64,000 nt of DNA from Mobula birostris (Eukaryota). The notes beneath the pieces were generated by a model, which saw nothing but the letters and a program-made list of their open reading frames with translations, was not told the origin of the DNA and did not search any database. The stretch spans positions 178,460,057-178,524,056 of the forward strand of contig NC_092374.1 in NCBI RefSeq assembly GCF_030028105.1. Direction: 5' to 3'. Positions within the stretch are counted from its first letter, which is position 1, and every line of letters starts with the position of its first letter. A program made the translations under genes and the position numbers. Of this stretch, positions 16,085-50,646 are shown one piece after another.

Positions 16085-16735
16085 AACACTAAACCTATCT
16101 TCATAGAGGGATCAGAAGTGGAGAGAATGAGCAATTTCAAGTTCCTGGGTGTCAACATCTCTGAGGATGCAGCTATAAAGAAGCCAAGACAGCGGCTGTA
16201 TTTCATTGGGAGGTTGTGGTGATTTTGTAGGTCAACTAAAACACTCGAAAACTTCTACAAATGTACGATGGAGAACATTTTGACTGGCTGCACCACCATC
16301 TCTTATGAGGGACTACTGGATAAGTTTGAAATAAATTGCAGAAACTTGTAAAATTAGTCAGATCTATCAGGGGTACCAGCCTCCATAGTATCCAAAATAT
16401 CTTCAAGGAGCGATGCCTTAGGAAGGCTACATCCACCACCACCCAGGACATGCCCTCTTCACACTGGAGCCATCAGGAAGGAGGCACAGAAGCCTGAAGG
16501 CACAGCTTCTTCCCCTCTGCCAGCCGATTTATCAATGGACATTGAACCCATGAACACCACTTCCTACTTCTTTTATTTCTGTTATTTTGCACTACTTATT
16601 TTAACTTAACAGCCATATATATACTTTATATAACTCAGTTTTTTATTTATTGTAAATTTCATTGTACTGCTGCTGTAAAGTTAACAAATCTCACAATCAA
16701 TGCCAGTGATATTAAATCTGATTCTGATTCTAAGC
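16085..16735 (+). mobile_element. Rex1-like LINE 3' fragment inserted antisense into the last exon / 3' UTR of gene B
   Basis: Family 3' end with (CTGATT)n tail near 16718-16732; it interrupts sequence that is continuous (caagcttagtgtt) in the plus-strand paralog. Confidence 0.8.
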
Positions 16736-16933: not shown

Positions 16934-17010
16934 CTACATCACTCCAAAGATTATCGCAAACACAGTCATCAGCCCCAACACAGGACCTGCACCATGGGGC
17001 TCACCAACTC
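16934..17010 (-). CDS. Gene B exon 5 coding part: GVGEPHGAGPVLGLMTVFAIIFGVM* (hydrophobic C-terminus, GPI-signal-like)
   Basis: Acceptor tggtgaacag| at 17011, phase 1, TAG at 16936-16934. The exon continues 36 nt to donor GAG|GTGGGT (16897), followed by a 90-nt intron to acceptor ctttgcag (16808). Homologous exon at 1265-1377 (+). Confidence 0.8.
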
Positions 17011-20000
17011 CTGTTCACCAAGTAAAGATCGGTAAATGTATAAATTATTTTATTATTGTCACCAGTTACCAGGTACAGTGGAAATACATGTTTTGCATTC
17101 CATCCATACAGAGCATTACATCAGGATATTAAGGTTGTACAAGGGAAAACAATAACAGGATGCAGAGTAATGTATTACTTTTATAGAGGATATGTGGTGC
17201 TAGCTGGCACTAGGATGCAAGACCATTAAAAGTTAGATTGTGAGGTCAGATGCCTATCTTACTATGTTTGGGTCCACTCAATTTTCTCACAGGAGAAAGA
17301 CAGAAGTGTTCATTGATCATAGCAGTACATTCTGTCAGGCTTTTGTATCTGTGCCTGATGGGAGCTGGGAGAAGCGGGGGTGGGTGAGGGGTGGGTGCCG
17401 GGGAGGGTAGTCCTGGGTGGGTAGTATCTTATATATTGGAGGATAGGAGAATGGAAGGTGTTTTGAGGAAGGAAGGATGTCATTAGGATGGAAAGGATGC
17501 AGAGGAGATTCACAAGGATGGTGCCAGGAATGGAATGCTTGAGAAATAAGGAGAGACAAGATAGGCTGGATTTTTTTCCCTGGAGTGTAGGGGGCTGAGC
17601 TATAGAGAGAAGTATATAAAATTTTGAGGGGCATAGAGAGAGTGCACAATAATTTTTCAGGGCTCCTGATGGTATAGGTTTAAGTTAAGAGAGAAAAGAT
17701 ATAACAGGAACCTGAGTGGCAACATGATGGTCAATTTATGGGTGCCAGAAAAAGTGGTTGAGGCAGACAAGTTAGCATCTTTTAAAAGGTACATCCACCA
17801 GTACATGGGTCTAAAGGGTTTAGGGAGATATGGGCCAGGATAAATGGGACTTCTTTGAATGGAAATCTTGATTGACAAAGGCGTGTTGGACTGAAGGGTC
17901 TATTTCTCTGCTGCAGAATTCTACGAATCTATGACACTCAAACACCCGACAGCCAGGCAGTGACCACTTGACAGTCAGGTCTTCCCCACAGTCCCAATTG
18001 CTTCTTAGTTGTTCTTTCTGTTGAGTTCTTACTATATTTCTTTGACCAACTGCTCAACTGCTTCTGTAACATCTGGTGAGCAGAAGGAACAGATTTAATT
18101 CGAGTGATAAAAGAGCACAGTATATAATAACTTCCAAAATGGAAATGGGATATGTTCTTGGAATTAAGAAATTTTCAGAGGTGTGTGAGAAGGAGTGGGG
18201 CTACTTGAGCAAGTCATTCAAAGTAGAGGACAAGGTGGTGAAGATAGCCTACAGGATGCTGGATTTCATTGATCAGGGCATAGAATTCAAGAGAAGGGAA
18301 CTTATGGTGCAGCTTTATGGTGGAGATTCTTGATTAGGTCTTTCAAAGAGGTAAATAGGGTGGTGAAGGAAGTGTATGAGATACCAATTATCAGTGCATA
18401 GAATACAAGGGCATGGGAATTATGGTACAGCTTTATAAAACATCGGTGAGGCTACATTCTGAGTATTGTTTACAGTTCTGGTCACCAGAGCAGAGGAGAG
18501 ATGTGATTGCATTGGACAGAGTGCAGAGGAGATTCACCGGAATGTGGCTCAGATGGAATGGGAAGAGAGAATAGATACACTGGTTTTGTTTTCTTTAGAT
18601 GGGAGGAGACTGCTGGTGGACCTGATGGAGTTATGCAGAATTATTAGGGGTGTAGATAGAAAATACATAGAAAATGTTGGAAGAATTTTTTAAAATATAT
18701 GTTATTTCTGTTTTTGCACTATTTTAAAATCTGTTCAATATACATATATATAATTACTGTAGTTGATTTACTTACTTGTTTTATATTTTTTCTATATTAT
18801 CATGCATTGCATTGTTCTGCTGCTGCTAAGTTAACAATTCTCACAACAGATGCCAGCAACAATAAACCTGATTCTGATTCTGAAGAATGCTACAGGTTTT
18901 ACTTGCTGCAGTTTATGCTTCCACTTCATGTGTTTGCTTGAACAGTAGTAAACCCTTCCCCATAGTAAAGGTGCCTATAACTCGAGGTAGGTTTAAGATA
19001 ATGACTAAGAGGTTTATAGGGAATCTACAGAAGCATACTTTCACCAAGGGGGTGTTGGAGTTGGGAATGGACTGCCTGAGGAGATAGTGGAGGCAGAAAC
19101 CGTCATAATTTTCAAGACGTATCTAGATGAGCAGTTGAATCATCAAGTTAAAGAAGGGGACGGGCCAAGTGTTTATGAGAACTAGAGGGTTTGCATGAAT
19201 CGGATTTGCATGAATTAGGTAGACTGAAGAGCCTCCTTCTCTGCTGCATGAGTCCATGAACCACCACAGGCAGAATGAAGCAAATTCTGTACCGTACAAT
19301 GACCTACCTCCCTTCACCATCAGGGCCTTTGGCAGGCTGCTGTGCTCGACATGACAAGTATAGATGTTCGGGTCATTGCCCTGCAGCTCAGTGACTAGTT
19401 CCATCCAGTATGTATCATTGTAGTTTGGTAGCACAGTCATGTTGTAGCCCTCAGAGACAACCTGCCCATTCTTCAGCCAAGTGGCATTGATAGCTCGGGG
19501 GTAGAAGGGAGTGATGATGCACGAGAGACTCTCGCCTTCAATAGCTGTTGGCCTCCTTGTCAACACCTGAACCTCTGGAGCAACTGGGGAAGGATCAAAA
19601 ATTATGTCACCACCTCAACACAGGCTGATGTTACCTTACTGTTACAGACTGAAGTTACAGTGTTCAATGTTGGGATTACTCTCACATCCTTCACTGCCTC
19701 AGAATGTGATCTGCCTCACTATTACACTCACCATCTAATCTGAAATCAGCCTCCCCAGCCCAAGCTCATGCAGACTACAGACAGAGATTACGTTCATTCA
19801 TCGGGCAGGTCCAGATCAAGGTCACAAGCACTATTCCCAATCCAGCTGTCGTGCAATATCCCAAATTCAGATCATCCTCAAACTGCAAGATGGAGAATGC
19901 CCTCAGCACAGCAGCGGTGATCAGAAGGTCCCTCACTGCCCCAGACCGGGAGATCAGTCAATGTCTCCATTTGGGAGCGCCCTCACTCAAAGATTCAAAG

Positions 20001-23000
20001 TAGATTAATTTCCAAAGTGTTTATACAGAATACAACTCTGAGGTTTATCCTCCGATGCAGCAAAGGAACAAAGAGGTACCAAGGAACCCGTTCAAAGAAA
20101 ACATCAAACACCCAACATGCAGAGAGAGAACAGATTGCACAAACAGCAAAAAGTGAGCTAGCAACACAGAGGATATCAAACATCCAAGCAGGGGTACTTT
20201 TGTTCTTAATTGTCCATTCCTCATCTGTTAGGGCATCGTAGTGTAGTGAGAATGACTCCAGAGGCAGTGTCTCATACTGTGTGTGAGATGTGAGTATTCT
20301 GGGAGACATGCAGTCTCTCGGATAAACACATCTGCACCAGGTGCGTCAAGCTGCTGCTCCTCAGAGAATGTGTTAAGGAACTGGAGCTGCAGCTCACTGA
20401 CCTTAGCTTCATATGGGAGAAAGAGGAAGTGATAGATAGGAGCTACAGGGAGGTAGTCACCCTTGGTTGCAGGAGATTGGTAGACAAGTGACTGACCGGA
20501 GAAGGAGGGGAAATGCACAGCCAGTGCAGAGTACACCTGTGGTCATACCCCTCAATATAAATGTACCACTTTAGATACTGTTGAAGGGGAAAACCTACCG
20601 GGGGTAACCACAGTGACCTCCTCTCTGGCACTGAATCTGATGCTGTGGCTCAGAAGAGCAGAGAGGTGAAGAAGACTTCAGTGTTGATCGGAAATTCCAT
20701 AGGCAGAAGAACAGAGACAAGATTCTGTGGGCACGATGGAGACACCCAGGTGGTATGTTGCCTCCCAGTTGCCTGGATCACGGATGTCTCAGATCAGGTC
20801 CATTGCATTTTCAGGAGGGAGGGTGAGCAGCCAGAAATCTCGGTGCATCTCGGCACCAATGAGAGGGGTCGATAAGTTGAGGAGGTCCTGAAGAGAGATT
20901 TGAGGGAGCTGTGTAGAAAGCTGTAAAACGACCTCCAGGGTAGTAATCACTGGATTTCTGTCTGTGCCAAGTGCCATTGAGGGTAAGAATAGTATGATTT
21001 GGCGCTGTATGTGTGGCCAAGGAATTAGTGGAGAGGGCAGGGGTTCTCTTCTGGAATAAGGTCGATGAACTTGTAGCACAGTTACAGACTGGCATGTATG
21101 ATTTTGTGTGGTAATACCATTCAAGGATACACATCGTGTCAAAAGGGTAGACAAATGCGGAGGCATTGCTCTGTTGGTAAAAAATGAAATCAAATCATTA
21201 GAAAGGTGATGTAGGGTCAGAAGATATTGAATCATTGTGGGTAGAGCTAAGGAACTTCAAGGGTAAAAAGACCCTGATGAGAGTTATATACAGACCCCTA
21301 AACTGTAGTAAGGATGTGGTCTACAAATTACAATGGGAGATAGAAAATGCATGCCAAATGGGTAATGTTACAATAGTTGTGGGGAATTTCAATGTGCAAG
21401 TAGATTGGGAAAATCAGTTTTGTGCTGGATCCCAAGAAGTGGAATTTCTAGAATGCTTGCGGGATGGCTTTTTAAAGTGGCTCATGGTTGAGTCCACTGG
21501 GGTATCAGCTATTCTGGATTGAGTGTTGTGCAATGAACCAGAATTGTTTGGAGAGCTTAAGGTAAAGGTACTCTTAGGAGTAAGTGATCATAATATAATA
21601 GAATTCACTGTCCAATTTGAGAAGGAGAGCTAAAGTCAGATGTATCAGGATTACAGTGGAGTAAAGATAATTACAGAGGCATGAGAGAGGAGCTGGTCAA
21701 AATTGATTTGAAAATAACACTGAAAGGGATGGTGGCAGAGCATAAATGGATGGAGTTTCTGGAAGCAATTCAGAAGGCGCAGGGTATGTACAAACAATAG
21801 AGGAAGATGTATTCTAAAGGCGAGATGACACAAGGTAGGTGGCCAATGAGAAGTCAAAGCAAACATAAAAGCCAAAGAGATGGCATATAATAGAGCAAAA
21901 ATTAGTGGGAAGTTAGAGAATTGGGAAACTTTTAAAACCCAGCAGAAGGCAACTGAGAAAATCATTAAGAAGGATCAGATGGAATATAAGAGTAAGCTAG
22001 CCAATAATAAAGAGGATGCAAAAAGTTTATACGGATAGAGAAGGTGTAAAAGAGAGGTGAGATTGGATTTTGGACTGCTGTAAAATGATGCTGGAGAGGT
22101 AGTAATGGGGACAACAAAATAGTGGATGAAATGAGGAAGACAGTAGCAGTATGCTGGAAGCTTGAGAGTGTCAGGGGAGCAGGTGTGTGTGTTAAGTTGC
22201 CATTACTAGACAGATATTTCTTGGGAAAAGGAAAGGTATTTAGGTCACCTGGACAGATGGTGTACCTGCTAGGATTCTGCAAGAAGTGGCTGAAAAGATT
22301 ATGGAGGCATTAGTAATGATCTTCCAAGAATCTTTAGATTCTGGAATGGTTCTGGAATGTTTGAAAATTGCGAATATCTCTCCACTCTTCAAGCAGGGAG
22401 AGACACAGAAGCAAGGAAATTATAGGCCAGTTCGTCTGTCCTCAGTTGTTTGGAGTTGATTGTTCAACATGGGATTTTGGGGTACTTGGAGGCACATGAT
22501 AAAATAGGACATAGTCAGCACGTTGGAATTCTTTGAAAAAAATAACAAGCCGGATAGACAAAGGAGAATCAGTGGATGTTGTGTACTTAAAGTTGTGACA
22601 TAGGTAGAACAAGGAAAGAGGTACTACTGAGGGAATTTGAGCAACTAGGGACTAAATTAAAAAGCAGAACAAAAAAGGTGGTAATCTCTGGATTACTACT
22701 GAGCCACGAGCAAATTGGCATGGGGTTTAGAAGATTAGAGTGTTATATGCAGGGCTGAAGGATCGGTGTGGGAGAAGTAGGTTTGATTTCATAGGAAATT
22801 GGCACCAGTATTGGGGAAGGAGGGAGCTGTACCAATGGGACAGGCTCCAGCTGAACTGTGAAGGGACCTGGCTGCTCGTGAATCGCATAACCAGGGCTGT
22901 GCGTAGGGCTTTAAACTAAATTGTAGGGGATGGGTTTAGTAGGGGGAATGGGTTCAACAGATCAGAAATGTATAGATAAAGTAAAAGAGAAAACTGTGGC

Positions 23001-26000
23001 TAAACATAATGACAAATCAAAAGATAAAAAAGAGAAAAGTAAGGGTGGAGTAAAGAAAAGACAAGTGCAAAAGAGAAAAAGATTACAAGATTTTAAAAGC
23101 ACAATGAGTGAAATGGCACTTTATCTGAATGCCCGTAGTATTCAAAATAAGGTCAGTGAACTTTCGGCACTAATCACTACAAAGGGGTATGATTTCATGG
23201 GCATTACAGAATTGTGGTTGCAGGGTGGAGAGGATCGGGAAGTGAATATCCAAGGATATCAGGTAATATGGAAGGATAGACAGGAATGTAAGGGAGGTGG
23301 GTTAGCGGTCTTAGTTAAGGATGAGATCAGGGTGATTGTGAAAGACGATGTAAGATCTAATGAGCAGAATTTTGAATCCATCTGGGTAGAGATTAGGAAT
23401 AGAAAAGGGAAAAAAATCACTGGTGGAAGTTGTCTATCGACCACTGAATTATAACATTATGGTGGCACAGGCAATAAACAGACAAATATCTGTGGCATGT
23501 GAGAATGGAACAGCGGTTATCGTGGGGGACTTTAACTTGGGTATAGATTGGGTGAATCAAGTTGGTGAAGGCAGTCTTAAGGAGGATGTGATAGAATGCA
23601 TCCATGATGGCTTTCTTGAACAACATGTCACTAAACCTACAAATCTTAGATCCGGTCCTGTGCAATGATCAGGTAAAATTAGTGATCTTGTAGTTAGGGA
23701 TCCTCTTGGAAAGAGTGATCACAGTGTGATTGAGTTTCTCGTACAAATGGAGGGTGCAATAGTTCGATAGAAAACTAGTGTATTACTGTATGCCTAAACA
23801 GTGTAGACTACAATGGGATAAGGGAGGATTTGGCTTGTGTAGACTGGGAACACAGGCTATATGGTGGGACGGTTGAGGAACAGTGGAAGACTTTAAAAGA
23901 GATTTTTCACGGTGTTCAACAGAAGTATCTTCTAGTTAAAAGTGGGGAGCAAGTAAGTTAGCAAGGGTGGGAAATGAAAGAAAGCATCAAACTAAAAGCT
24001 CGTTTGTACAAATTTGCCAAGAGCAGTGGGAAAATGCAAGATTGAGAAAACTTTAAAAAGCAACATAGAACCACTAAGTGAGCAGTGAAGGAAGGGAAGA
24101 TAGACTATGAAAATAAACTAGCACAAAATATAAAAGCAGATCATAAAAGTTGTTATAATTATATAAAGCAGAAAAGGGTGGCTTAAGTGAACATTGGTCC
24201 CTTGGAAGACGAGAAGGGGAATTAATATTGGGGAATGAGGAAATGGCAGAGGCTTTAGATCTACGTTGTGTCGGTCTTCACAGTGGAGGTGGCGGGCACG
24301 TCTAACATGCCAAAGACAGATGTTATGGATGCAATGGGAGGCAAGAACCTGATACAATAGCTATCACTAAAGAGGTAGTGCTGAGCAAACGTGTGGGCCG
24401 GAAGATAGCTAAGTCCCAGGGTACTGAAAGAAATGGCAGAAGTTATAGTGAAGGCTTTGGTGATAATTTACCAAAATAGAACAATAGAGTTGGGGCTAAT
24501 GTATTAGCATGGATAGAGGATTGGTTGACTAATAGAAAGAAGAGAGTTGGGATGCCTGGGTGTTTCTCTGGTTGGCAGTCAGTGGTGAGTGGTGTGCCAT
24601 TGGAGTCTGTGCTGGGCCTGCAACTGTTTACGATATACATTAACGATCTGGAAGAAGGGGGCTGAGTGTAGAGTATCTAAGTTTGTGTAAGGTATGGAAG
24701 CATCTGGAATCTTGTCAATAAGGTCTATGCAGGAACTCTTGACTCCTGAGAACTGCTGAATTGCATGTATTTTAAGGTGTAAAAGACCATGCTTGTGCTC
24801 ACTTTAGCAGAGTCTTTTAGTGGGCTCTCCATGGTCATGTAAGTAAGTAATTAAACTGAATACTGGGGTCTGTGTCCTTGTTTAATCAGCAATAGTAAAT
24901 TTCTGTGACACTCAGAGTAGAGGGGCATCCTTTTAAAAAGGAGATCAGGAAATATTTCTTGAGCCAGAGAGCAGTACATCTGTGGAATTTGTTGTTACAG
25001 CCAACTTGGCAGCTGTGGAGGCCACATCTTTACTATATTTAAAGCAGAGATTGATAGATTCTTTATAGTCACGACATGAAGGGATACAGGGAGAAGGCAG
25101 GACATTGGAGCTGTAAGGGATAATGGACCAGCATGATGAAATGGTGGAGCAGACTCGATGGGCCAAATGGCCCCATTCTGCTTCTGTATCTTATGGTTTT
25201 ATCAAGTCTAGATGTACTCAGTTTAGTTCAGTGCCTTGCCACTAGCCAAATGCAGGCCGCAGATTGTCTTCGCTGAAACGCCCAGTGCGCACTGATGCAC
25301 CCTGATCAAACCACTTAGAAACAGCAAAAAAAGGGTAACCAGAATCCAGAAATACATGAACCCTAAAGTCCCCCAGAAAGAGTCACAATCACGAGCCTCA
25401 CCGATCAATCCCTGCAATGTGGAACCCAAGCCTCCTGCACTTTCCTCCAACAGCAGCTAGTAAAAGGGAGAGGAATACCAGCCAAACGCGGCAGATGGCG
25501 CCAAATACCAGCCTGGCCTCCGCACTTGGCCTCGTCCACTTCAGCCTTGCTCAATACCCCAGCCAGAGAGAAGCAATGGAGCCAATCATGGGCTCACAGT
25601 CCACCTCCAGGTCTGCAGGCCGTACACTCCAATCAACTCACTGTTTCAAATTAGGAGATCCCTCATTACTACAGATTGGGAAACCCTAACCATTTTGTTT
25701 TGTGAGCTCCCTCTCTTTCCCGTATGAGGAGATCCCTCTGCATCTCTGATTGGAAGCTTCCTTACTGTCCAGATCAGGAGATTCCTCTCTGTCCCAGATT
25801 GGGAACACCATCAATTTGTTAGATCATCAAATCCTTCAGTATCCTGAATCATAACAGCCCACACCATCTCGGTCTCAGAGCCCCATAATCGTCTCAGACT
25901 GAGGTATCCTTTATGTTGCTGAATTGGGAGTTCCCTCTCCATCACAGGATGTTCCACTTGCCTTGCCTTTCCAATGCTTCTCTTCCAAGCTGAACAACCC

Positions 26001-29000
26001 TTTGCAAATACCAAGTGCAGTTACTCTTCAATGCAGTCACGTCAGTGAAACTGAGTTGGCTCAATTGATCATTGAACATTGCTAGGAAACCGGTGCCATT
26101 GCATTTCAATGTGTTCAAATCACAGCTGATCTCTCCGATATCCGGGACATTGATTTTTAGAATCGCGTTGACCGTATCTCCAGATTGTGTGCAGCCCCAG
26201 AGTGCCTGTATGTAGCTGAAGCCTGTAAATTACCAACAGATTAATTAACATTAATGGCTGAAGCTTCCAATACTAGATAATGGTCTGGTAAATACGTAAA
26301 TGCTATGTGACTAAGAGGTGCACAAAGTAGTGGGTCACGGTCAGCGACTGTGTACAGTTAAGGCCGAGAGCATGGGGTGAAGTGTCCTATATAGAACATT
26401 TGTCAGTGTGTGGCACAGATCACAGGGTCTGGTGGAATCAGTAATCAATGTGAGCAACTGTCTACACGGCAAGGTGGGAGGGGAAAGTTTAAAGAGATTC
26501 AATTTGTCATTAACGAATGGCAATGTTTCCCAATGTGCAGTGAAAAGCATTCGGATTGGTTACATCACAGCCGGTAGGTAAACTCCAAAGCTCTGAAAGA
26601 CAAAAGGCTGCGGGGGTGCTGGGCTCAACCAGGCCCATCACAGGCACAGCTCTCCCCATCGTTGAGGACATCTGCAGAAGGCAATGTCCCAGGAAGACAA
26701 CATCCATCATCAGGAGCCACACCCTCCCTATCATCCAGGACATACTCTCTTCTTGATGCTACCACTAGGAAGGAGGGACAGAGGCCAAAGGACCAACACC
26801 TCAGGCTCCAAAAAGAGCTCCATGCCCAATACCACCAGGTTCTTTAACCAACCAGAAAAGCCTTAACGAGACCCTAGATTATATTCTTCTCTCTCTTAAT
26901 TTTGCACAAATATTGTTACATTTATTTTGTTGTATGCCTTTGCACATGTGCGGGTTGTACATATTTATTTAAAATTGACTCCATGCTAACATGTCCTGTA
27001 ATATACCATGCTGCTGCTGTAAGACAGTAATTTGATGGCATTTGTACCCTGTGTATGTCAGCCTATGATCAGAAATAAACTTGAGCTTGAACTTATGCGG
27101 AGTGCACAGTACAGAGATCACGTTGAAACACTGTGCAGTGCACAGTACTCTACATACAAAGCAGGGGGCACATTGAAGGACTCTGTCGACATGTGGGTCG
27201 GAGCAGGGGCTCACAGTGAGAGACTGCGCTGTACAGTCTGCGCTGAACCACGTCCACTGCAGAGAGTTACGGCGGAGAATTGTGAAAGCAACGTGTTTGT
27301 ATTCAGTGTCAATAAGCACAGAGTGTGCAACACAGCAGTTCTGGTCACTCTGTGACGGTGAGGCTTTGGAGTAGGTGCAGAAGATGCTTACCAGATGCTG
27401 CCTGGATTGGACAGCATGTGCAATAACAAGTGATTTGACCAATTTGGGCTGTTTTCTCTGTTTCAAAGTTGACAGCTGGTATAATTTTTCCCTCAGTTGA
27501 AATGTCTAATGCAAGAGGGCATGGAAAAGGGGATATGTTCAATGGAGATGTGCAGGGTAAGACTATTACAGAATGGTGGGTTCCTAAATTGTGCTTCCAG
27601 GGGTTGTGGTAGTAGCAGATACAAAGAGGGTGTTCAAGAAGCTTAGGCGAGCAGGACATGGACATTGTGTAGGCAGAAAAGATGAGATTAGTTTGGTATT
27701 TGATTATTAATACAATTAGTTCAGCAGAACATTTTGGGCCAAAGGGCCTGTTCCTGTGTTGTAGCATTCTAGGTCTAATGCATGGAGTCCCCGCACCGAA
27801 TTAGATCTGGAAAGCATCATTGTGGCAGGTGACTAGATAAGAACCATGGACGTCTTAGTTCCAACCATCCTAGACTGAAGCATCCCCAAGTCTGGAGTTG
27901 GGGAGTAGGCTTAGGATTAGGGTTTGAGCCAGGCAAAGCCTGTATGGACAGTGGGTTTGATTTTCACTGTTTCTCTGAAGAGATCATTGGGGAATGAGGA
28001 CTGGATAATCAGTTTATTTTGAAGGGTTAGAACTTACCCAGATGATTAGGATGGAATTCTTGTAATTGGAGTTAAGGAAGGTAGAGAGCAGAATGGAGAT
28101 TTGAGAGATTTGAAAGAGTGAAGGACTTTAAACTTGATACAGCATAATCAGATCTAATAGAAGATCAAGATATTGGCAATATGCAAGTCACTGTGATACT
28201 CAAAGGGTAGTGGGGGTCAAAGACACTCACTAATCGATGAGGGTAATTGCTTCAGATATGTCGAGAGGAGCTCATGAAGCCGATCGGCTATTTCTTTCTG
28301 TTCTTTCCAGTAGTCGGTCGATAAGCCATCTGCGATCCACTGGTACTTGACTTCTACTTCACGGAGTGTGCTGTCGTAGTAGTCTGTCTGCAAGTCATTG
28401 AGCATCCCAATCCTGAAGGAAACTGGTATTTCATGAATGCTGATGGGTTGGAAGTAGTGATATGTCAAGCTGTATGCGCCTGAGTAAAAGGACAGAGAGA
28501 GTGTCAGAAAACAACAAAGGATGCTCACAATTTATAAGGCAGAAATTGGGAGTTTGATGACATACTCGCCACTTGAATGGATTAATACACATCCAAACAG
28601 ACATCCTACTGGATCAGGCAGCACTCCCACCCCTCTTTATTAGCTCCCCAAACACGACCAACCAACACTATGAAAACTTGCTTCACTGCTCTGGCCATTT
28701 ACAAAATCCTAAGCAGATACTCACCGAAGCCAATCTAACAGAACGACCCAAACCCCAGCACAAAGGAGGTCAAGGGCAGCAGGGAAACAGGAGCCCCAAC
28801 TCCCACTATAGGGTTGCTTCTAAGTCAGAGGCAACCATAATGGAATATGAGTCCACCATGATAGAGCGGAAGCCAAGTTTCAAGGAGAAGCAGAAGACAA
28901 TTCCGGGGCACCAGTGTAGAAATTCTCATCATCGCAACAAAGGTGACAGAGAAAGAGCACAGAAAAGAGGTAGTGGAGTCCCACAAGAGGCAGAGTGGGA

Positions 29001-32000
29001 GGATGAAAAGTAAAGATAGTTGTGGCAGTCTGCATGTTGACAAGGACATTTGCGAATGCAATCAGGATAGGAAAGACTTAGATATGCCCTGTATGAAGAG
29101 GAAAATAGGCTAGGAATTGGGAGCAAGGAAAATGACAATTTCCAGTTCTGTCTGAGTGTGGGGAGCAGCACCAATGCAGTGATCAATGTCAAAGGAAAGG
29201 AGCTGAGTGATGTAGCCCAAGGATTGAAAGTTAGCAGTCATTTCAAGAGGACAAGAATATAAAAGCAAAGGTGTGATGTTAAGACTTCAGGAAGCACTGG
29301 TGAGGCCTGTTGTGGAGTATTGTGAGCAATTCTGGGCCCCTTAGGAAGGATGTGCTGAAACTGGAGAGGGTTCAAAGAAGGTTCATGAAAATGATTCCAG
29401 GATTGAAAGGTTTGTCACATAAAGAGCATTTGATGGTTCTAGGCCTGTGTTCACTGGAATTCAGAAGAATGAGGTGGGACCTAACTGAAACCTGTCAAAT
29501 TGTGAAAGCCCTTGATAGAGTGAATGTGGAGAGGATGTTTTCTATGGTGGGAGAGTCGAAGACCAGAGGACACAGTTTCAGAATAGAGGGGTGTCCTTTT
29601 AGAACAGAGATGAGGAGGAATTTTTTTTAGCCAGAGAATGGTGAATCTGTGGGATCCTTTGCCACAGGCAACTTAGCAGCAGTGGAGGTCAAGCCGTTAT
29701 GTATATTTACGGCAGAGGTTGAGAGATCCTTGACTGGTCAGGACATGAAGGGATACAGGGAGAAGGCAACAGATTGGAGCTGAGGGTAAAATTGGATGAA
29801 ATGGCAGAGCCGACTTGTTAGGCCAAATGGCCTAATTCTGCTCCAATATCTTATGGTCTTATGGTAACAAGACTGTTCCAGGTATCCAAGTGCAGAAGAG
29901 ATTTTCCAGAATGCTTCCTGGATTAGAGGCCATAAGAATTGAATTGAATTGACCTTATTACTTACATCCTTCATATACAAGAGGAGTAAAAACCTTTACA
30001 TTATGTCTCTGTTCAAATGTGCAATGTAGAATTGTAGTAATTTATAATAAATATTATGTACAACAGGACAGTCAATATGACATAGAAATACAATTGCATC
30101 AGCATGAACTAAGCAGTCTGATGGAAGAAGTTGTCCCGGAGCCTGTTGGTCCTGGCTCTCATGCTGCGGTACCATTTCCCAGATGACAGCAGCTGGAACA
30201 GTTTGTGGTTGGGTTGACTCGGGTCTCCAATGATCCATCGGGCCATTTTTACACACTTGTCCTTGTAAATATCCTGAATAGTGGGAAGATCACATCTCCA
30301 GATGAGCAGGGCTGTCCTCATCACTCTCTGCCGAGTCCTGTGATTAAGGGAAGTACAGTTCCCGTACCAGGCAGTGATACAGCCAGTCATGATGCTCTCA
30401 TTAGTGCCCCTGTAGAAAGTTCTTAGAATTTGGAGAGGGGCCATACCAAACTTCTTCAACCGTCTGAGGTGAAGGAGATGCTGTTGTGCCTTTTTCACCA
30501 CACAGCTGGTATGTTCAGACCATTTGAGATCCTCGGTGATGTGTATGCGGAGGAGGAGTTGTTCTCTGGAGTGACAGAGACTGAGGGAAGATCTGATAGA
30601 CGTTTATAAGATTACAAGAGCATCCCAGGGTCAAAATATCTAACACTAGAGGGCACATATTTCAAGTGAAAGGGAATAAATTCAGAGGATATTTGTAGGG
30701 CAATGTTAATTTTACAGAGTGGTAAGTGTCTGGAATCAGCTGTGAGGGCTGGTGGTGGAGGCAAATACAATGGAGGTAGTTAAGAAACACTTAGAAAGGC
30801 TCATGAATTGCAGAGAATGGAAAGATATGGACACTGGCAGAAGGGTTTAGATTAGTTACACATTTAGTTACCGGTTTAATTAACTTGGCACAACATCTTG
30901 GGCTGAAGGGCATATCCCAGTTCTGCACTGCCCGGTGTTGTCATCTCAGAGAAAGATATCATAGGATTCCCCTGGTTGCTCTGATTTCCTGACACACCCC
31001 AGAGATGGGTGGATTGGTAGGCTAATTGGCTGCTGTAAATCACCCCTGAGGTGTGTGTGAGTGGTGGCATCTGGGAAGGTGTTGATGCGAATGAGGGAAG
31101 AATAAGATTAGATGAGTGTAAATGGGTGTTTGATGGACCCAGGAGGACAGTACTGACTCTGCAGGAGAATCACTTTCTTTAAAATCTTGACATTACTGAC
31201 TAGCTGCATCAAAACCTGGGACAGAATCTACAATAGACAGGAATACAAGAGCTCAGAGAATGGTGGTCACAGCCTGATCCACCATGGGCACATCCTACTC
31301 CAACACTAGCAGTATCTACAGGAGGCACTGCTTCAAGAAGGCAGCATCTACCATCAAGGATTCCCATCATTCGCATCGTGCAGTCTTCTTGCTGCTACTG
31401 TCGGGCAGGAGGGACGGAAGACTGGCATCCCACAACATCAGGTTCAGCAACAGCTGCTTTCCTACAGACATCAGTTCTTGAACCAACCTGCACAATCCTA
31501 ACCCTGCAACAGCAATGAAACACTACAGACTGCCTCTTGCACCTTTCAGACCATAAGACATAGGAGCAGAATTAGGCTAATCAGCCCATCGAGTCCTTTC
31601 AGCATTCCATCATGGCTGAATCCAGATCCCACTCAACCCCATACACCTGCATCCTCGTCATATCACGATCAACTTCCGCCTTAAATATATGCACTGACTT
31701 GGCAGCCCGTGGCAGAGCATTCCACAGTTTTAACGCTCTCTGGCTAAAATAAATTGCTGCTTACTTCTTTTCTAAAGGGCCACCCCTCAATTTTGAGGCA
31801 GTGCTCTCTAGTTCTGGATACTCCACCACTGGAAACATCCTCTCCACATCCACCCCTACAAGTCCTTTCAACATTCAGTAGGTTTTAATGAGATCACTCC
31901 ACATTTTGCTAAACTCCAGTGAGTACAGGTCCAAAGCTGCCAAATGCTCTTCATACGTTAACCTCTTCATTCCCAGAATCATCCTCCTGAACCTGCTCTG

Positions 32001-35000
32001 TGCTATCTCCAATGATAACACATCCTTTCTGAGATATGGGGCTCAAAACTGTTCACAATGCTTTAAGTGTGGCCTGATTAGTGTCTTATTATTATCTCCT
32101 GGCTTTTCTTGAAAGATCATGTCCAATGCATTTGTTATCTCTTCAGCAACCTCTCTCAAGTTTCTGGGACATAGTCCATCTGGCTCAGGTGACTTACCCA
32201 CCTTAAGACCTTTGAAGTTGGCTAGCACTTTTTCCTTTGTAAAAGCAAAACACCCACTCCTGCTCTCTGACACTCACGGACCTCTGGCACACCGCTAGTG
32301 TCTTCCACAGTGAAGACAGATGCAAAGTACCCATTAAGTTCCTTTGATAAGTCTTTGTCCCACATTACTACCTCACCAGCATCATATTCCAGTGGTCTAA
32401 TATCAACTCTCACTTCCCTTTTATTCTTTATGTAACTGAAAAAACTGTTGGTGTCCTGCTTCATATTATTGGCTAGTCAGCCCTCATATTTCATCTTTTC
32501 CCTTCTTATAGCCTTTTTAGCTACTTTTTGTTGGATTTTAAAAGTTTCCTAATCATCCAACTTCCCACTCACATTTGTTACCTTATACATCCTTTCCTTG
32601 ACTTTTATGCAGTCCTTAGCTTTCTTTGTCAGCCATGGTTGCCTAGCCCTGCCATTCGAGAACTTCTTCCTCTGTGGCACATATCTATCCTGCGCCTTGT
32701 GAACTATTCCCAGAAACTTCAGCCATCTCTGCTGTCATCTCCACTAGTATTCTCCTTCAATCCACCTGGGCAAGCTCCTCTCTCATGCCTCTGTAATTCC
32801 CTTTATTCCATTGCGATACTGACGCATGTGCGTTATGCTTCTCCCTCTCAAATTGCTATACGAATTCAATCATATTTTGATCACTGTCTCCTAAGGAATC
32901 CTTTATGTTCATCTCCCTAATAAGATCTGGGTTATTACAGCATATCTGTAGATGTGAACTTCCCACTATTCAGGACATTTACAAAGACAAGTGTGTAAAA
33001 AGGGCCTGAAGGATCATTAGGGATCTGAGTCACCCCAACCACAAAATGTTCCAGCTGCTACCATCTGGGAAACGGTACCACAACATGAAAGCCAGGACCA
33101 AGAGGGACAGCTTCTTGCACTCGGCCATCAGACTGCTTAATTCGTACTGAATTTCTATGTTGTACATACTATTTGTTATAAATTACTATAAATTACACAT
33201 TGCACCTTTAGATGGAGACTGACGTAAAGATTACGAAGGATGTAAGTAATAAAGTCAATTCAATTCAATTCAATACACAACACTCAATCTAAGATAGCCT
33301 TCCCCTGAGCAGGCTCAAGCACAAGCATTCTCTGACCCTATGTCACCTCTTTCTAAAGATGTAATTCCATCTCTTACCAACAGAGCCATACCACTGCCTA
33401 TGCCTTTTTGCCTGTTCTTTCCTTCCAAAGTATATCATTTGATGTTGTGACAAAACTGCCAAGTTATCAGAAGATTGGTGCCGATAAGAGAAACAATGGG
33501 GGAACATTCGGGAATGCTAATGGGGAACGAGAGAGATTAACAAAAAGGGGGGCACAGTTCTGAGTATTGTCAAGACGGGCCGCTTTGAACCTGAAACTGT
33601 TTGAAGTCTGATGGACAGGCGATACCCCAGCAGGGGGATAAAAGGGACAGTTTCGCTAAGGCAAATCAGACACCACGACACGACGGGACAACGAGACCCT
33701 GGAAGTGCGTTGTGCCCCCACAAGTTGGTGGAAGTTTTGGAGGTCTGCTCACGGGACCAGCCAAAGACGCACAGGGTGGGAAGGTAAGAGTCGGCGGGAG
33801 CCTGGTGTGTGTGTCCGCCCTTGCCTGGGTGCCGGGTTCACCGCAAAGGAACGACCGTATCTGGAACGTAGGGGTCACAGTCGGTGACCTCACAAGACAT
33901 TACAAAGGACTCGCCTGAAAGCTAACTGCGAGGAATATCGAAGGTCTGTTTGGAATCCGATTTGAATATTCGTTCGCTCTCTCTCTCTCCCCGTCCCCAC
34001 AACGGCGCAACAGCGATTACTGCGAACTGAGCTGAACTAAATTGAACTGAACTTTGCGTCACTTGAAACTAATCATTTACCCCTAGACTGCGATAGAGCT
34101 TAATTGATCCTATTATCCTAGTTCTGTGTACATGCGTGTTGTATCATTGTTAATCTGTTGCATTTATATCCTTATGATTAGAGTACTGTGTTGCTTACTT
34201 CTTTAATAAAACTTTCTTAGTTCCAGTAATCCAGACTCCAACTAAGTGGTCCACTTCTGCTGGTTTGGCAACCCAGTTATGGGGTACGTAACAATGTTAA
34301 GGTCCCAAATTTGGTCTTTTTTCAGCCACAGTTCCGTGATCCCCACAATGTCACGCAGAAAAATCTCTAATTGCACCTCGAGTTCATCCACCTTATTCCA
34401 AATACAGCACCTTCAGTCCTGCATTCTTCACCCTTTTGAATGTTGCCTCTGTGGTACAACTTAACTCTTTGCTCTGTCTGCAATTGTACCCAATCATTGG
34501 CTTGTCCTTCCTTACATACGTTACACCCATCCGTGTTTTTCTTTTTTGCATCTACAGAATCACCCATCTGTCCCCCTGCCTACAGAATCTCCTATTACTG
34601 CTGCCACCCTCTTCAGTTCCGTACCCCTCTGAGCCACAGGGCCAGACTCAGTGCCAGAGGCACGGCCACTGTTGCTTTCCGGTGTACTGTTGCGACTGGG
34701 CATCTCTGATTCTGTTTTTTTTTGCTCTGATGTCTCAATCTGCAGTAATTTTTGTTCATTGACTTGCATAAACTTTCCGTAACTGTCATTGCGTGTGCCC
34801 TGAATATGCCTGATGTAATGCTGCTGCAAGCGAGATTTTCATTTTATCCATGTCTAACCATTCTTATGCATATGACAATAAACTTGACTGAACGTGACCT
34901 CTCTGAACGTTCTAAATTCCCTGTTACCTAAGGTAACTGAAACTGAGCAATATTGTTCTTTGCGATTTATTGCTTCTATTTTTCTGCTTCCTTTTTCATT

Positions 35001-36051
35001 GTATTTTCTGTAAGCGCCAGTGCAGACACAGAACACTCTCCCATAGTCTGCCATGTGTAAACATACTGACCAACCACCCCAACACCAGAGCTTTGACGAA
35101 CTCGCCACTCATGTCCACTGGCAACGGCCTCCACTTCCCGCTGCATCATTTGGCATGAGCGGTGTTAACCTGGCGATTTTACAAAACCTCCCAGAAGTCC
35201 TTATACATAACATGCATCAATGTTCTGCCAGTCTATTACCACAGCAATCACCAAAACTTAGAGCCAACTCTTGATGCACTTTGTAAATAGAAAGAAAAAG
35301 TTCTGACAATAGTCAACAGGCCAGGCAGTATCTGGAGAAAAGAGGAACTGTTAATGTCTCAAGTTAAAGACGGAAGGTTCCGATAGCATGCAAGGACAGA
35401 GAAACAGGGCTAATGTTTAATGACCAAGGTGGAAATCTTGCAACAGTTCGGGTAGCATCTGTTGGGAGACAAAGAATGAATGTTTCAGATTCGGGAGCCT
35501 GAGTCAGAACTTGGAATGAGAGAAATCAAGTTAGTTTTTGTTAGCAGAGAAGTCATTCACACATAAGGCACAGAAAGAGGCCACTCGGACAGCTATGTGT
35601 GTGCAGACCCTAGAGGAATGGGTAGAACAGGGGTATTTCTTTGGTATTGTGAAACAGACTGACGTAACGTGGCAGTTAAGGGATAGTTAAACTCAGATTA
35701 ATTGCTTTAATGTGATGCCTCTGTTAAGACTGTGGGACTTTCCTCTTTGGGAACTGGCGATAGACCCCAAACTACCCACCGCTGAAACATATTCAAGGAT
35801 CATTTTGCCCCGAGTTTATCGACTCCAGAAATTTCACAGGAGTGAAATCAGAACACAGGAGTGCGATGAGTTCGTCCTGCCGTCTAATGGAGCAACTGCC
35901 AGGAACTCCAAAAGATTTAAAGGTGAATTTCCCGACACAACCCCCGACCATCGCCGTCACATACCCTCGCCTCACCTGCCTGTTGTCCCGCGACAGAGCA
36001 GAGAGATAACGCGGTGACAAGGAGCGATACCGGTCCGGTCCAGCTCTCCAT
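16934..36051 (-). CDS. Complete spliced nonclassical MHC class I-like heavy-chain gene ('gene B'), 5 coding exons, 939 nt, 312 aa
   Basis: Exons 36051-35976 (76 nt), 28479-28231 (249), 26222-25962 (261), 19583-19308 (276), 17010-16934 (77). All introns are phase 1 with AG acceptors; the joined CDS is 939 nt with no internal stop. Domain order leader-alpha1-alpha2-IgC1-hydrophobic tail is that of class I. Confidence 0.88.
19308..19583 (-). CDS. Gene B exon 4: alpha3 Ig C1-set domain (92 aa)
   Basis: VAPEVQV...LSCIITPFYPRAINATWLKNG...YTCHVEHSSL shows the IgC1 C-x4-FYP, W and YxCxVxH motifs. Acceptor ttccccag| at 19584, donor G|GTAGGT at 19307; 276 nt. Confidence 0.93.
20240..22590 (+). mobile_element. 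Degenerate CR1 LINE including ORF1 with an SGNH-esterase-like domain (gene B intron 3)
   Basis: VLIGNSIGRRTETRFCG...VCCLP...VHLGTNE (20645-20875), endonuclease fragment WVELRN...IYRP...VGNFN (21235-21522), RT remnants. Confidence 0.85.
22600..24690 (+). mobile_element. Second degenerate CR1 LINE (ORF1 end plus ORF2 endonuclease/RT)
   Basis: ALYLNARSIQNKVSEL...GITELWL...GGGLAVLVK...IWVEIRN (within 22930-23454); VVYRP...GDFN (23423-23668). Confidence 0.85.
25962..26222 (-). CDS. Gene B exon 3: divergent MHC class I alpha2 domain (87 aa), not represented in the ORF track
   Basis: Hand translation SFSYIQALWGCTQSGDTVNAILKINVPDIGEISCDLNTLKCNGTGFLAMFNDQLSQLSFTDVTALKSNCTWYLQRVVQLGREALERQ has Q96, WGC (C101), C164 and the typical ...LER end. 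Acceptor aatttacag| at 26223, donor AG|GCAAGT at 25961. Confidence 0.85.
28231..28479 (-). CDS. Gene B exon 2: MHC class I alpha1 domain (83 aa)
   Basis: GAYSLTYHY...GMLNDLQTDYYDS...QWIADGLSTDYWKEQ... matches the class I alpha1 pattern. Acceptor ttttactcag| at 28480, donor A|GTGAGT at 28230. Overlaps ORF 28217..28528. Confidence 0.9.
31550..34560 (-). mobile_element. Degenerate CR1 LINE in gene B intron 1, carrying a nested LINE 3' piece (~32940-33275) and a solo LTR
   Basis: RT remnants (GLKVGKSPEPDGL, FFSYIKNKREVRVDIRPLE); CR1 sequence resumes on both sides of each insertion. Confidence 0.78.
33446..34293 (+). mobile_element. Solo LTR (848 bp), antisense to gene B in intron 1
   Basis: Termini TGTGACA...GTAACA, perfect 4-bp TSD ATGT (33442-33445 / 34294-34297), TATA-like gataaaaggg, AATAAA near 34204; CpG-rich. 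Confidence 0.88.
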
Positions 36052-36470
36052 TGCGACAACTCCTCGCATCGACTGAACCCTGATCGTTAGTCAGTGAAGT
36101 GCTGAGGGTGGAATTAGATTCACAGACGCGGCTTGGGGCAAACAGGGTAAACAGGTGCAGCCAGTAGCTGAAACTCCTCCTACAGAAATGACTGTGTGGG
36201 CAACGGAGTGTCGGCTGGTCGCGGGAGGGAGAGGAGCCAAACCACTTCCTGTTGTGTTGCAACAGATCCAGCGAGAGGAGATTTCAGGAACCTCCGAACA
36301 GCCCGAGGGAAGCTGCTCCGCACAAAACTTCTCCAATCACTAGGTAAAACAAAACTTCCAGAAGAGCTGGACGGGTCAGGCGGCAGATGTGAAGGAAAAT
36401 GCAGTGTCAACCCAAAACGTCCACTGTCCAGATCGCCTCCGCAGCTGCGGCCTGACCCGCTGATTCATAG
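35640..36470 (-). promoter_or_regulatory. CpG-rich promoter / first-intron region of gene B with candidate factor sites
   Basis: Non-repetitive and locally CpG-rich around the leader exon. GGGACTTTCC (kappaB consensus) 35734-35743; TGACGTAA (CRE-like) 35660-35667; ACAGGAAGTG (ETS, minus) 36252-36243; CCAATCA 36333-36339. Motif matches only. Confidence 0.5.
35976..36051 (-). CDS. Gene B exon 1: signal peptide MESWTGPVSLLVTALSLCSVAGQQA
   Basis: ATG at 36051-36049, hydrophobic core, phase-1 donor G|GTGAGG at 35975; lies in a non-repetitive CpG-rich stretch. Confidence 0.82.
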
Positions 36471-49840: not shown

Positions 49841-50200
49841 CGGGGCAACGGCAAGACGGCCTGACTTACCCCACGGAGGTGAGAACAAGACACGACAAGA
49901 CATGCAAGACATGTCCCCCCCATGGGGCAACGGCAAGACAGCCTGACTTACCCCACGGAGGCAAGGACAAGACAAGACAAGATACGACTCCCTGTGGGGC
50001 AACGGCAAGACGGCCTGACATACCCCACTGAGGCGAGGACAGGACAAGACAAGACATGACTCCTCGCAGGGCAACGGCAAAACAGCCTGACTTACCCCAC
50101 GGAGGCGAGGACAGGACAAGACATAACTCCCCGTGGGGCAACAGCAAGACGGCCAGACTTACCCCACGGAGGCGAGGACAAGACAAGACAAGACCAACAC
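49841..50200. repeat. Five tandem ~70-80-bp units inside the solo LTR
   Basis: Core ggggcaacggcaagacggcctgacttaccccacggaggcgaggacaagacaagaca; a further ~35-bp unit (ccaggacttgact) occurs three times at ~50341-50440. Confidence 0.9.
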
Positions 50201-50646
50201 GAATGAACACCAGACAGTACCTATCTAGCTCCGGTGATGGAACTGGACCGAAGTGCAGGCAGGGGCAGCAAACGAGGGCTAGAGGCGAGAGGGGCAGAGA
50301 AGGGATTCAGACAAGGGGGTAGGGCAAGAATCACAGACCGCCAGAGCCAGGACTTGACTCAGAACTGGGATGCCGCCAGGGACAGGACTTGACTTGGTGC
50401 TAGAATGCCCCTAGAGCCAGGACTTGACTTGGTGCTTCCGGGTAGTGGTGAGCTCTTGACTCAACCCAGGAACAGTAGACAGTGGTTCTTGATTCCCTCC
50501 AGTGGGTTAACTGACGGACCCACTTCAGTGAGGAAACTTTGCAGGCTCGCTTTGGCGAGGTATCTGGACTGGGTTGCTCCGGTGAGGAAGGGCGAAATAC
50601 CAGCACTCGCGATCGGCAGATACAAGGCTTGCTCCGGCCAGATGAC

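What the first reader, a model, noticed from the sequence alone, without database searches (positions are those of the whole stretch)
16934..36051. Intact, highly divergent MHC class I-like gene with no cytoplasmic tail and a GPI-anchor-like C-terminus
Seen: five phase-1 exons join into a 312-aa ORF (leader-alpha1-alpha2-alpha3) ending in ...GVGEPHGAGP-VLGLMTVFAIIFGVM*. That is small residues (G-A-G), a short spacer and a 15-residue hydrophobic stretch at the extreme C-terminus with no basic stop-transfer residues. Known: this is the layout of a GPI-attachment signal; GPI-anchored class I-family proteins are known in mammals (Qa-2, ULBP/RAET1, MILL). I do not recall one among the named cartilaginous-fish lineages (UAA, UBA, UCA, UDA, UEA, UFA). 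Inference: a possibly undescribed GPI-linked nonclassical class I lineage, which would have to signal through a partner or act as a ligand.
Basis: partly seen in the sequence, partly recalled or inferred. Interest (0 to 1): 0.9.

Follow-up and report, generated by a model that had tools for sequence, protein, structure and literature searches.

The report
Manta ray UFA gene, GPI-like tail
This is an intact manta-ray copy of UFA, an already known shark and ray class I-like family thought to bind lipids like CD1. Its short tail-less hydrophobic end, found in every shark and ray relative examined, looks like a GPI-anchor signal, but this has not been tested.

Summary
Five phase-1 exons on the minus strand (36051/36069 to 16934) join into an open class I-like reading frame. 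It is identical to RefSeq XP_072113436.1 of Mobula birostris, which starts six codons earlier (318 aa).

The lineage is not undescribed. All three ectodomain exons match PDB 8GM8 best, and that entry is titled 'shark nonclassical MHC class I, UFA'. In a family tree the gene sits among ray co-orthologues of the single-copy shark UFA genes. UFA has expanded in rays, to at least five and probably seven loci in the manta.

The tail-less end is a trait of the whole lineage. All 25 full-length relatives tabulated, from 14 named species plus one skate mRNA sequence, have a small-x-small triplet. It lies 4 to 10 residues before a C-terminal uncharged stretch, usually of 13-15 residues, that ends at an aligned stop. 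Skate mRNA contigs carry this end uninterrupted.

GPI anchoring is the best reading (about 0.6). A tail-less transmembrane anchor is not excluded. No GPI predictor, Mobula transcript or bench test was available.

The scan had already noted the same kind of tail on the neighbouring paralogue (s1-145112).

The parts
35976..36069 (-). Exon 1: start codon and signal peptide. RefSeq uses the ATG at 36069.
   Evidence: the mature N-terminus is inferred from alignment to the first residue of 8GM8
28231..28479 (-). Exon 2: alpha1 domain, short (83 codons), with AG acceptor and GTGAGT donor
   Evidence: 8GM8 E 3e-11; MR1 about 1e-4
25962..26222 (-). Exon 3: alpha2 domain with four cysteines, followed by a GC-AG intron (donor GCAAGT at 25961-25956)
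   Evidence: the only significant PDB match is 8GM8, E 4e-11; GC donor kept in 5 paralogues
19308..19583 (-). Exon 4: alpha3, an Ig C1-set domain. Its last base begins the split codon for G294, the proposed omega residue.
   Evidence: C1-set 6e-15; 8GM8 3e-24
16934..17010 (-). Exon 5: terminal exon. It completes the G294 codon, then encodes V-G, the spacer E-P-H-G-A-G-P, a 15-residue hydrophobic end and the stop (16936-16934). The 3'UTR continues in the same exon.
16572..16651 (-). Two AATAAA polyadenylation signals, 282 and 356 nt after the stop
1264..1341 (+). Terminal exon of the neighbouring A-type UFA paralogue. It lies tail-to-tail with gene B and has the same layout and the same stop position.
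18029..18085 (-). Candidate alternative terminal mini-exon in intron 4 (AG acceptor, phase 1, 13 codons then stop, hydrophilic). No use of it is shown.

Best explanation
Gene B is an intact manta-ray (Mobula birostris) member of UFA, the elasmobranch nonclassical MHC class I lineage. Reviews describe UFA as CD1-like and lipid-binding. The gene encodes a signal peptide, an alpha1/alpha2 platform with an extra cysteine pair in alpha2, a C1-set alpha3 domain, and a 24-residue C-terminal peptide encoded by the last exon. That peptide most likely acts as a GPI-attachment signal. This would place a roughly 263-residue ectodomain in the outer membrane leaflet, with no cytoplasmic sorting or signalling motif. 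The protein would then act as a displayed ligand or antigen-presenting molecule and not as a signalling receptor. Shown here: the gene model, UFA membership, conservation of the tail, and the spliced skate mRNA. Inferred: GPI attachment, the omega site, association with beta-2-microglobulin, and lipid binding.
For: Gene model: it equals RefSeq XP_072113436.1.

UFA membership:
- The whole protein matches 8GM8 at 7e-61, against 8e-29 for 9CH4 (UGA) and 2e-28 for MR1.
- The alpha2 exon has no significant PDB match other than 8GM8.
- PDB titles name 8GM8 as shark UFA and 9CH4 as shark UGA.
- 8GM8 is the nurse-shark sequence P0033.
- In a 27-sequence family tree, sharks have one copy per species in roughly species-tree order. 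Rays form one clade (100/100), and gene B sits in a Mobula subclade (99/93).

Tail:
- All 25 full-length relatives tabulated have a small-x-small triplet (mostly G-V-G or G-V-S), 7 to 10 residues (4 in the two skates) before a C-terminal stretch usually of 13-15 uncharged residues (21 in skates) that ends at an aligned stop. They come from Lamniformes, Carcharhiniformes, Orectolobiformes, Heterodontiformes, Pristiophoriformes, Hexanchiformes, Rajiformes, Rhinopristiformes and Myliobatiformes. The Torpediniformes isoform X1, read separately, ends the same way.
- The uninterrupted hydrophobic run is 10-15 residues outside skates, and the AF2 C-terminal helix covers residues 304-317. That is short for a plasma-membrane span.

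Transcripts:
- Two contigs of about 1.3 kb from sequencing runs SRR13269337/8 carry the whole 316-aa skate CDS uninterrupted, with the stop and 203 nt of 3'UTR.
- The skate tail and the start of its UTR align colinearly with manta genomic DNA across the stop.
- The skate cluster holds 42 sequences. All 15 listed are 316 aa, and 14 of them sit on mRNA-sized contigs.

Other points: an N-terminal signal peptide is present. CD1-like lipid binding of UFA and UGA is stated in PMC10751288 and PMC12562908 as unpublished or a personal communication.
Against: - No validated GPI predictor could be run, and there is no biochemical evidence in any species.
- A 19-residue Kyte-Doolittle window over the end scores 1.5-2.1, so a transmembrane predictor would probably also call it a helix.
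- A-type paralogues and some sharks have K, R or E two to four residues from the end.
- V or L at omega+1 is acceptable, but the exact omega site is not conserved in position across sharks.
- No Mobula transcript was found, and the RefSeq model may rest on homology.
- Gene-wide dN/dS against the closest paralogues is near 1 (0.75 and 1.28, small counts), so relaxed constraint on this particular copy is not excluded.
- The tree has no outgroup.
Confidence: 0.6

Rival explanations
1. The same UFA gene, but the hydrophobic end is a short, tail-less type I transmembrane anchor that is not cleaved or exchanged for GPI.
For: The last 19 residues average Kyte-Doolittle 1.5-2.1. AF2 draws a C-terminal helix at 304-317 (low confidence). 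Skates have a 21-residue uncharged stretch. Conservation of the tail fits either kind of anchor.
Against: Outside skates the uninterrupted hydrophobic run is only 10-15 residues and follows a Gly/Pro-rich segment. No basic stop-transfer residues follow it. A conserved small-x-small triplet sits at the usual omega distance. From established knowledge, single-pass plasma-membrane spans average over 20 residues, and tail-less hydrophobic C-termini preceded by small residues are typical GPI signals.
Confidence: 0.25
2. The main product is soluble. Either alpha3 is spliced to an alternative hydrophilic terminal exon (such as the mini-exon at 18085-18029), or the anchor signal fails and the protein is secreted or degraded.
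For: RefSeq isoforms X2 and X3 of the Narcine orthologue replace the hydrophobic end with hydrophilic ends. A phase-compatible mini-exon with an AG acceptor is open in gene B. It is also open, with the stop at the same place, in the A-type locus L004.
Against: No annotated Mobula isoform uses the mini-exon. Among the recent paralogues it is no better conserved than the surrounding intron. The X1 isoforms and all skate mRNA contigs examined carry the hydrophobic end.
Confidence: 0.07
3. Gene B is a recently duplicated, drifting or unexpressed copy, so its features say little about function in the manta.
For: There are at least five, probably seven, UFA loci in M. birostris. Whole-gene dN/dS is 0.75-1.28 against the nearest paralogues. 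No Mobula transcript was found.
Against: The ORF and all splice sites are intact. Alpha3 dN/dS is 0.32-0.53 against close paralogues and 0.36 against the A-type copy (Fisher p 0.01 for the A-type comparison). The excess of replacements is concentrated in alpha1, as expected for diversification of a ligand-binding domain, though weakly supported (p 0.08).
Confidence: 0.08

Closest known systems
Nurse shark UFA (PDB 8GM8, 'shark nonclassical MHC class I, UFA')
   Same: It is the best match in alpha1, alpha2 and alpha3 (E 7e-61 overall; about 39% identity in the family alignment). It shares the four-cysteine alpha2 pattern and the short alpha1, and the family tree fits orthology.
   Different: Gene B is one of several ray paralogues, whereas sharks show one copy per species. 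The crystallised construct ends after alpha3, so the nurse-shark tail itself was not seen. Other shark UFA proteins have the same kind of tail, with a spacer three residues longer.
Shark UGA (PDB 9CH4)
   Same: It is the second-best solved relative (E 8e-29, Z 19.8). Reviews pair it with UFA as CD1-like, MHC-linked and lipid-binding (PMC12562908).
   Different: It is much more distant, and the alpha2 exon does not detect it. Its C-terminus was not examined here.
CD1 family (mammals, birds, reptiles)
   Same: The proposed working analogy is a class I fold presenting lipids. The Atlas language-model neighbours are CD1a and CD1b-like clusters (a lead only), and RefSeq auto-names some orthologues 'CD1d-like'.
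   Different: By sequence it is no closer to CD1 (CD1c 9e-23) than to MR1 (2e-28). CD1 molecules are type I transmembrane proteins, and most (CD1b, c, d) have tyrosine-based endosomal sorting tails. This protein has no cytoplasmic residues at all.
GPI-anchored class I-family proteins of mammals: Qa-2 (H2-Q7), MILL1/2, several ULBP/RAET1
   Same: A class I-like ectodomain ending in a hydrophobic peptide without a cytoplasmic tail. The anchor type is known for those proteins from the literature (my own knowledge).
   Different: They are unrelated lineages within the class I family that arose in mammals. ULBPs lack alpha3. Here the feature runs through a whole lineage shared by sharks and rays, so it predates their split.
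MR1
   Same: RefSeq's automatic name for this gene is 'MHC class I-related gene protein-like', and MR1 chains are the next-best PDB matches after UFA and UGA.
   Different: Similarity is only at the level of the class I family. The alpha2 exon finds no MR1. The review PMC12562908 lists MR1 as absent from cartilaginous fish.

Membership tests
Elasmobranch UFA lineage (MHC-Ib) | Closest similarity to the reference UFA sequence in all three ectodomains, clearly above other class I lineages | tested here: met
   8GM8 (titled UFA) is the top hit for alpha1 (3e-11), alpha2 (4e-11, the only significant hit) and alpha3 (3e-24). Whole protein: 7e-61, against 8e-29 for UGA and 2e-28 for MR1.
Elasmobranch UFA lineage (MHC-Ib) | Groups with shark UFA in a phylogeny | tested here: inconclusive
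   The family tree of 27 sequences follows the species tree, and nurse-shark UFA falls among the sharks. No non-UFA outgroup could be fetched: the alpha3-region search returned only family members.
Elasmobranch UFA lineage (MHC-Ib) | Maps in the MHC-Ib cluster next to beta-2-microglobulin (PMC10751288) | tested here: inconclusive
   Met for the sawfish co-orthologues. P0009 and P0013 lie at CM019888.1 13.256-13.291 Mb, inside loci listed in that paper's supplement about 0.17-0.2 Mb from B2M. For the manta, the only evidence is another class I alpha1 exon in the window. Flanking marker genes were not examined.
Elasmobranch UFA lineage (MHC-Ib) | Hydrophobic, lipid-binding groove | not testable with these tools
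   This is stated only as unpublished or a personal communication in PMC10751288 and PMC12562908. The AF2 model (pLDDT 69.5) gave no coordinates to analyse.
GPI-anchored protein (attachment signal) | N-terminal ER signal peptide | tested here: met
   A hydrophobic leader precedes the residue that aligns with residue 1 of 8GM8. This was judged from the sequence; no predictor was run.
GPI-anchored protein (attachment signal) | Small residues at omega and omega+2 | tested here: met
   G294-V-G296 in gene B. A matching triplet exists in all 25 full-length homologues tabulated.
GPI-anchored protein (attachment signal) | Spacer of about 5-10 residues, then a hydrophobic stretch of about 10-20 residues running to the very C-terminus with no cytoplasmic residues | tested here: met
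   Gene B has a 7-residue spacer (E-P-H-G-A-G-P) and 15 hydrophobic residues before the stop. Across the family, spacers are 7-10 (4 in the two skates) and tails 13-15 (21 in skates).
GPI-anchored protein (attachment signal) | Positive call by a validated predictor, or PI-PLC sensitivity | not testable with these tools
   NetGPI, PredGPI and big-PI are not available offline, and no experimental data were found.
Classical peptide-presenting class I | Conserved residues that hold the peptide termini | not tested
   Inspected by eye only. The alpha1 tyrosines corresponding to Y7 and Y59 seem to be present, and the alpha2 set (T143, K146, W147, Y159, Y171) seems to be absent. No residue-level alignment to a classical chain was made.
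CD1 family | Sequence membership (Pfam MHC_I_3 / closest to CD1) | tested here: not met
   CD1c scores 9e-23, below MR1. The alpha1 and alpha2 exons alone hit no MHC Pfam family. A precomputed MHC_I_3 hit is recorded only for P0001. The resemblance is functional, according to reviews.

The most novel reading that the evidence does not exclude
UFA, the CD1-like lipid-binding class I lineage of sharks and rays, is GPI-anchored throughout the lineage, and has been since before sharks and rays split. That would make it the oldest known GPI-linked member of the MHC family. It would be an antigen-presenting molecule that lacks any cytoplasmic sorting motif, sits in the outer leaflet, and in some rays also has alternatively spliced soluble forms. 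I could not tell whether this has been reported; no paper in the searchable library mentions it.
Probability: 0.3. Interest if true: 0.6.

Novelty: new member of a known kind. Interest (0 to 1): 0.4.

Why it matters
If UFA really presents lipids as CD1 does, its mode of membrane attachment decides where it can pick up cargo. Most CD1 isoforms use a tyrosine motif in the cytoplasmic tail to reach late endosomes. A GPI-anchored UFA could not do this. It would be confined to the secretory pathway, the cell surface and the recycling routes used by GPI proteins, and it could be shed.

The end is shared by every shark and ray order sampled, which says the anchor type is part of the molecule's function and not an accident of one gene.

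The expansion of UFA in stingrays, mantas and sawfish contrasts with a single copy in sharks. Replacements among the manta copies look concentrated in alpha1. Together these suggest ray-specific diversification of ligands or receptors.

For annotation, RefSeq's automatic names (MR1-like, HFE homologue, CD1d-like, Q7-like) hide the fact that these genes form one lineage.

Tried and rejected
- Pfam on the alpha1 and alpha2 exons alone gave no MHC family. The exons are short and divergent, so this is not evidence against class I.
Its spacer is one residue, and its first position is H, W or R in several sharks.
- A possible internal donor in the tail exon (GGA|GTGATG) leading to hidden cytoplasmic exons was rejected. 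The skate mRNA reads straight through to the stop and UTR, and the stop is aligned in all homologues.
- The alpha3-region protein search, meant to fetch outgroup lineages, returned only family members, so the tree is unrooted by any outgroup.
- An Atlas search with the last 34 residues gave only scores of 0.81 or lower and is uninformative.
- Six literature searches for the primary UFA paper or any mention of GPI in shark class I found nothing beyond two papers that cite UFA as unpublished or a personal communication. The two J Immunol papers on the shark nonclassical class I lineages (cited in PMC12562908) are not held.
- Intron conservation does not single out the mini-exon.
- P0008 turned out not to be the window's neighbouring gene A. 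It lies 1.45 Mb away.
Full report
**The observation**

Reading the minus strand gives five exons:
- leader, 36051-35976
- alpha1, 28479-28231
- alpha2, 26222-25962
- alpha3, 19583-19308
- tail plus stop, 17010-16934

Every intron is phase 1 and every acceptor is AG. Donors are GT except after alpha2, where the donor is GCAAGT.

An in-frame ATG 18 nt upstream (36069) adds six residues. With it, the protein is letter-for-letter P0014, RefSeq XP_072113436.1 of Mobula birostris, 318 aa. The locus is CM057560.1 at about 178.48-178.50 Mb.

The GC donor is present in all five M. birostris paralogues examined, and the same boundaries reproduce the RefSeq protein P0010 exactly. It is therefore a conserved GC-AG intron and not an error. 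The window contains no N runs.

**What the gene is**

The alpha3 exon is an Ig C1-set domain (Pfam 6e-15). Each ectodomain exon, searched alone against PDB sequences, has 8GM8 chain A as its best hit: alpha1 3e-11, alpha2 4e-11, alpha3 3e-24. For alpha2 it is the only significant hit. The whole protein scores 7e-61 to 8GM8, 8e-29 to 9CH4 and 2e-28 to MR1.

The structural comparison returned the entry titles:
- 8GM8: 'Crystal structure of shark nonclassical MHC class I, UFA', released 2024-11-27
- 9CH4: the same title for UGA, released 2026-03-18

The 8GM8 sequence is listed in UniRef as a Ginglymostoma cirratum protein (P0033).

Two papers describe UFA, and with it UGA. [quoted passage not shown] So the gene belongs to a lineage that specialists have named and crystallised.

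**The family**

Word-based searches seeded from those relatives found the rest.
- Sharks show one gene per species: Cetorhinus, Carcharodon, Mustelus, Pristiophorus, Heterodontus, Chiloscyllium, Heptranchias and Ginglymostoma.
- Rays show one gene (Amblyraja, Leucoraja, Narcine), two (Pristis) or many (Hemitrygon, Hypanus, Mobula).

In a maximum-likelihood tree of 27 sequences, sharks and rays separate at 100/100. The shark part broadly follows the species tree, with nurse-shark UFA next to Chiloscyllium. Within the clade of sawfish, stingray and manta sequences there is an 'A-type' clade and a larger clade that contains the Pristis genes and the 'B-type' genes. Gene B sits in a Mobula B-type subclade (99/93), at most 88% identical to its nearest paralogue. 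No outgroup could be fetched, so the rooting rests on the shark-ray split.

In M. birostris the annotated copies lie at 176.94, 177.01, 178.48 (gene B), 178.60 and 178.74 Mb. In addition, a 581-aa RefSeq model (P0049) fuses two near-identical A-type genes that flank gene B on the other strand. The terminal exon of one of them is in this window at 1264-1341, plus strand. That makes at least five and probably seven loci.

The two sawfish copies lie at 13.256-13.291 Mb of CM019888.1. They fall inside loci listed in the supplement of PMC10751288, about 0.17-0.2 Mb from B2M, among genes marked MHC-Ib. This agrees with that paper's statement of where UFA maps.

**The C-terminus**

The last exon encodes two bases of the G294 codon followed by 24 residues. 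In gene B (318-aa numbering) the end reads K292-G-G294-V-G296, then E-P-H-G-A-G-P, then 15 hydrophobic residues, then the stop. The codon of G294 is split across the alpha3/tail junction.

I tabulated the 25 full-length homologues from 14 named species plus one skate mRNA sequence. Every one has:
- a triplet with small residues at the first and third positions, mostly G-V-G in rays and G-V-S, G-L-S or G-S-S in sharks;
- a distance of 7 to 10 residues (4 in the two skates) from that triplet to the C-terminal stretch;
- a C-terminal uncharged stretch of 13-15 residues (21 in the two skates) that ends at an aligned stop.

Narcine isoform X1, read separately, ends the same way. This is the standard layout of a GPI-attachment signal: omega and omega+2 small, a short spacer, and a hydrophobic end with nothing after it.

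On that reading the last exon encodes almost exactly the propeptide that would be removed.

A 19-residue hydropathy window over the end scores 1.5-2.1, and the uninterrupted run is 10-15 residues outside skates. The AF2 model draws a low-confidence helix at 304-317. Fourteen or fifteen residues is short for a plasma-membrane span, and no basic residues follow. Even so, a tail-less transmembrane anchor cannot be excluded from sequence alone.

**Is this end really expressed?**

For the manta I found no transcript. For a skate I did:
- Two contigs of 1336 and 1315 nt from runs SRR13269337 and SRR13269338 carry the complete 316-aa CDS without introns, the stop, and about 200 nt of 3'UTR.
- The cluster holds 42 sequences. 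All 15 listed are 316 aa. One is Leucoraja erinacea XP_055521808.1 and the other 14 sit on contigs of 1.1-1.35 kb.
- The skate tail and the first part of its UTR align colinearly with manta genomic DNA across the stop.

So the exon is terminal, and the weak internal GT in the tail exon is not used in the skate. Two AATAAA signals follow the manta stop at 282 and 356 nt.

**Alternative ends**

RefSeq isoforms X2 and X3 of the Narcine gene replace the hydrophobic end with hydrophilic ends, so soluble forms may exist in some rays.

It has an AG acceptor, is phase-compatible and is open for 13 codons. It is also open, with the stop at the same place, in the A-type locus L004. Among the recent paralogues it is no better conserved than the intron around it, and no annotated manta isoform uses it.

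**Selection**

- Against the A-type copy, alpha3 has dN/dS 0.36 (Fisher p 0.01).
- Against the two nearest paralogues, alpha3 is 0.32 and 0.53.
- Against those same two, alpha1 is 4.8 and 1.3, resting on only 1.5-4 synonymous differences (p 0.08 and 0.8).

This fits a functional gene with a diversifying alpha1, but the support is weak.

**Mechanism and confidence**

The gene model and UFA membership are shown. I infer that the protein enters the ER, pairs with beta-2-microglobulin, and is cleaved at G294 and transferred to GPI. It would then be displayed as a ligand or lipid-presenting molecule without any cytoplasmic motif.

My weights are about 0.6 for GPI anchoring, 0.25 for an uncleaved tail-less membrane anchor, and the remainder for a mainly soluble product. 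Separately, I put the chance that this copy is drifting or unexpressed at about 0.08; that reading can hold together with any of the three. No GPI predictor could be run offline.

**Novelty**

The gene is annotated and its lineage is named and crystallised. What I could not find in any searchable paper is a statement on how UFA is attached to the membrane. The primary structure paper is not in the library, so I cannot say whether the authors already describe it.

The same kind of end was noted by this scan on the neighbouring paralogue (s1-145112). I confirmed that exon.

Noticed in passing
window 62199-62525 (-), 59900-60217 (-): An alpha1 exon of a different, more classical-like class I gene (best PDB hits 5H5Z at 1e-16 and 6LUP, another chain named 'MHC class I protein', at 4e-12). 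Alpha2-like pieces follow in two different reading frames, and no alpha3 was found in the window. It is probably a class I fragment or pseudogene next to the UFA genes.
   Followed up: partly
window 1264-1341 (+) and beyond both window ends: RefSeq XP_072115050.1 (581 aa, 'uncharacterized protein') is a fused model of two near-identical A-type UFA genes on the plus strand. They flank gene B, which lies inside the model's span on the other strand. This looks like an annotation artefact of a segmental duplication.
   Followed up: partly
window 18029-18085 (-); L004 15230-15307: A candidate alternative terminal mini-exon (13 hydrophilic codons then a stop). It is open in gene B and, with the stop at the same place, in a distant A-type paralogue. 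Narcine RefSeq isoforms X2 and X3 also end hydrophilically.
   Followed up: partly
window 25956-25961 (-); L004-L007: The intron after alpha2 is a GC-AG intron (GCAAGT). It is conserved in all five M. birostris UFA copies examined, including the divergent A-type.
   Followed up: yes
window 28231-28479 (-) against L005 and L006: Replacement changes among the recent manta paralogues are concentrated in alpha1 (dN/dS 4.8 and 1.3) while alpha3 is constrained. Counts are small (p 0.08).
   Followed up: partly
window 7980-8444, 30109-30501, 48883-53582, 56784-57323: Reverse-transcriptase and related retroelement ORFs (RVT_1; the ALKBH8_N-like domain) fill the introns and intergenic DNA.
   Followed up: partly
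P0017-P0022 (Hemitrygon, Hypanus): Some stingray UFA paralogues have lost the extra alpha2 cysteine pair and carry a four-residue deletion there. One (P0020) also lacks the cysteine equivalent to Cys164.
   Followed up: no
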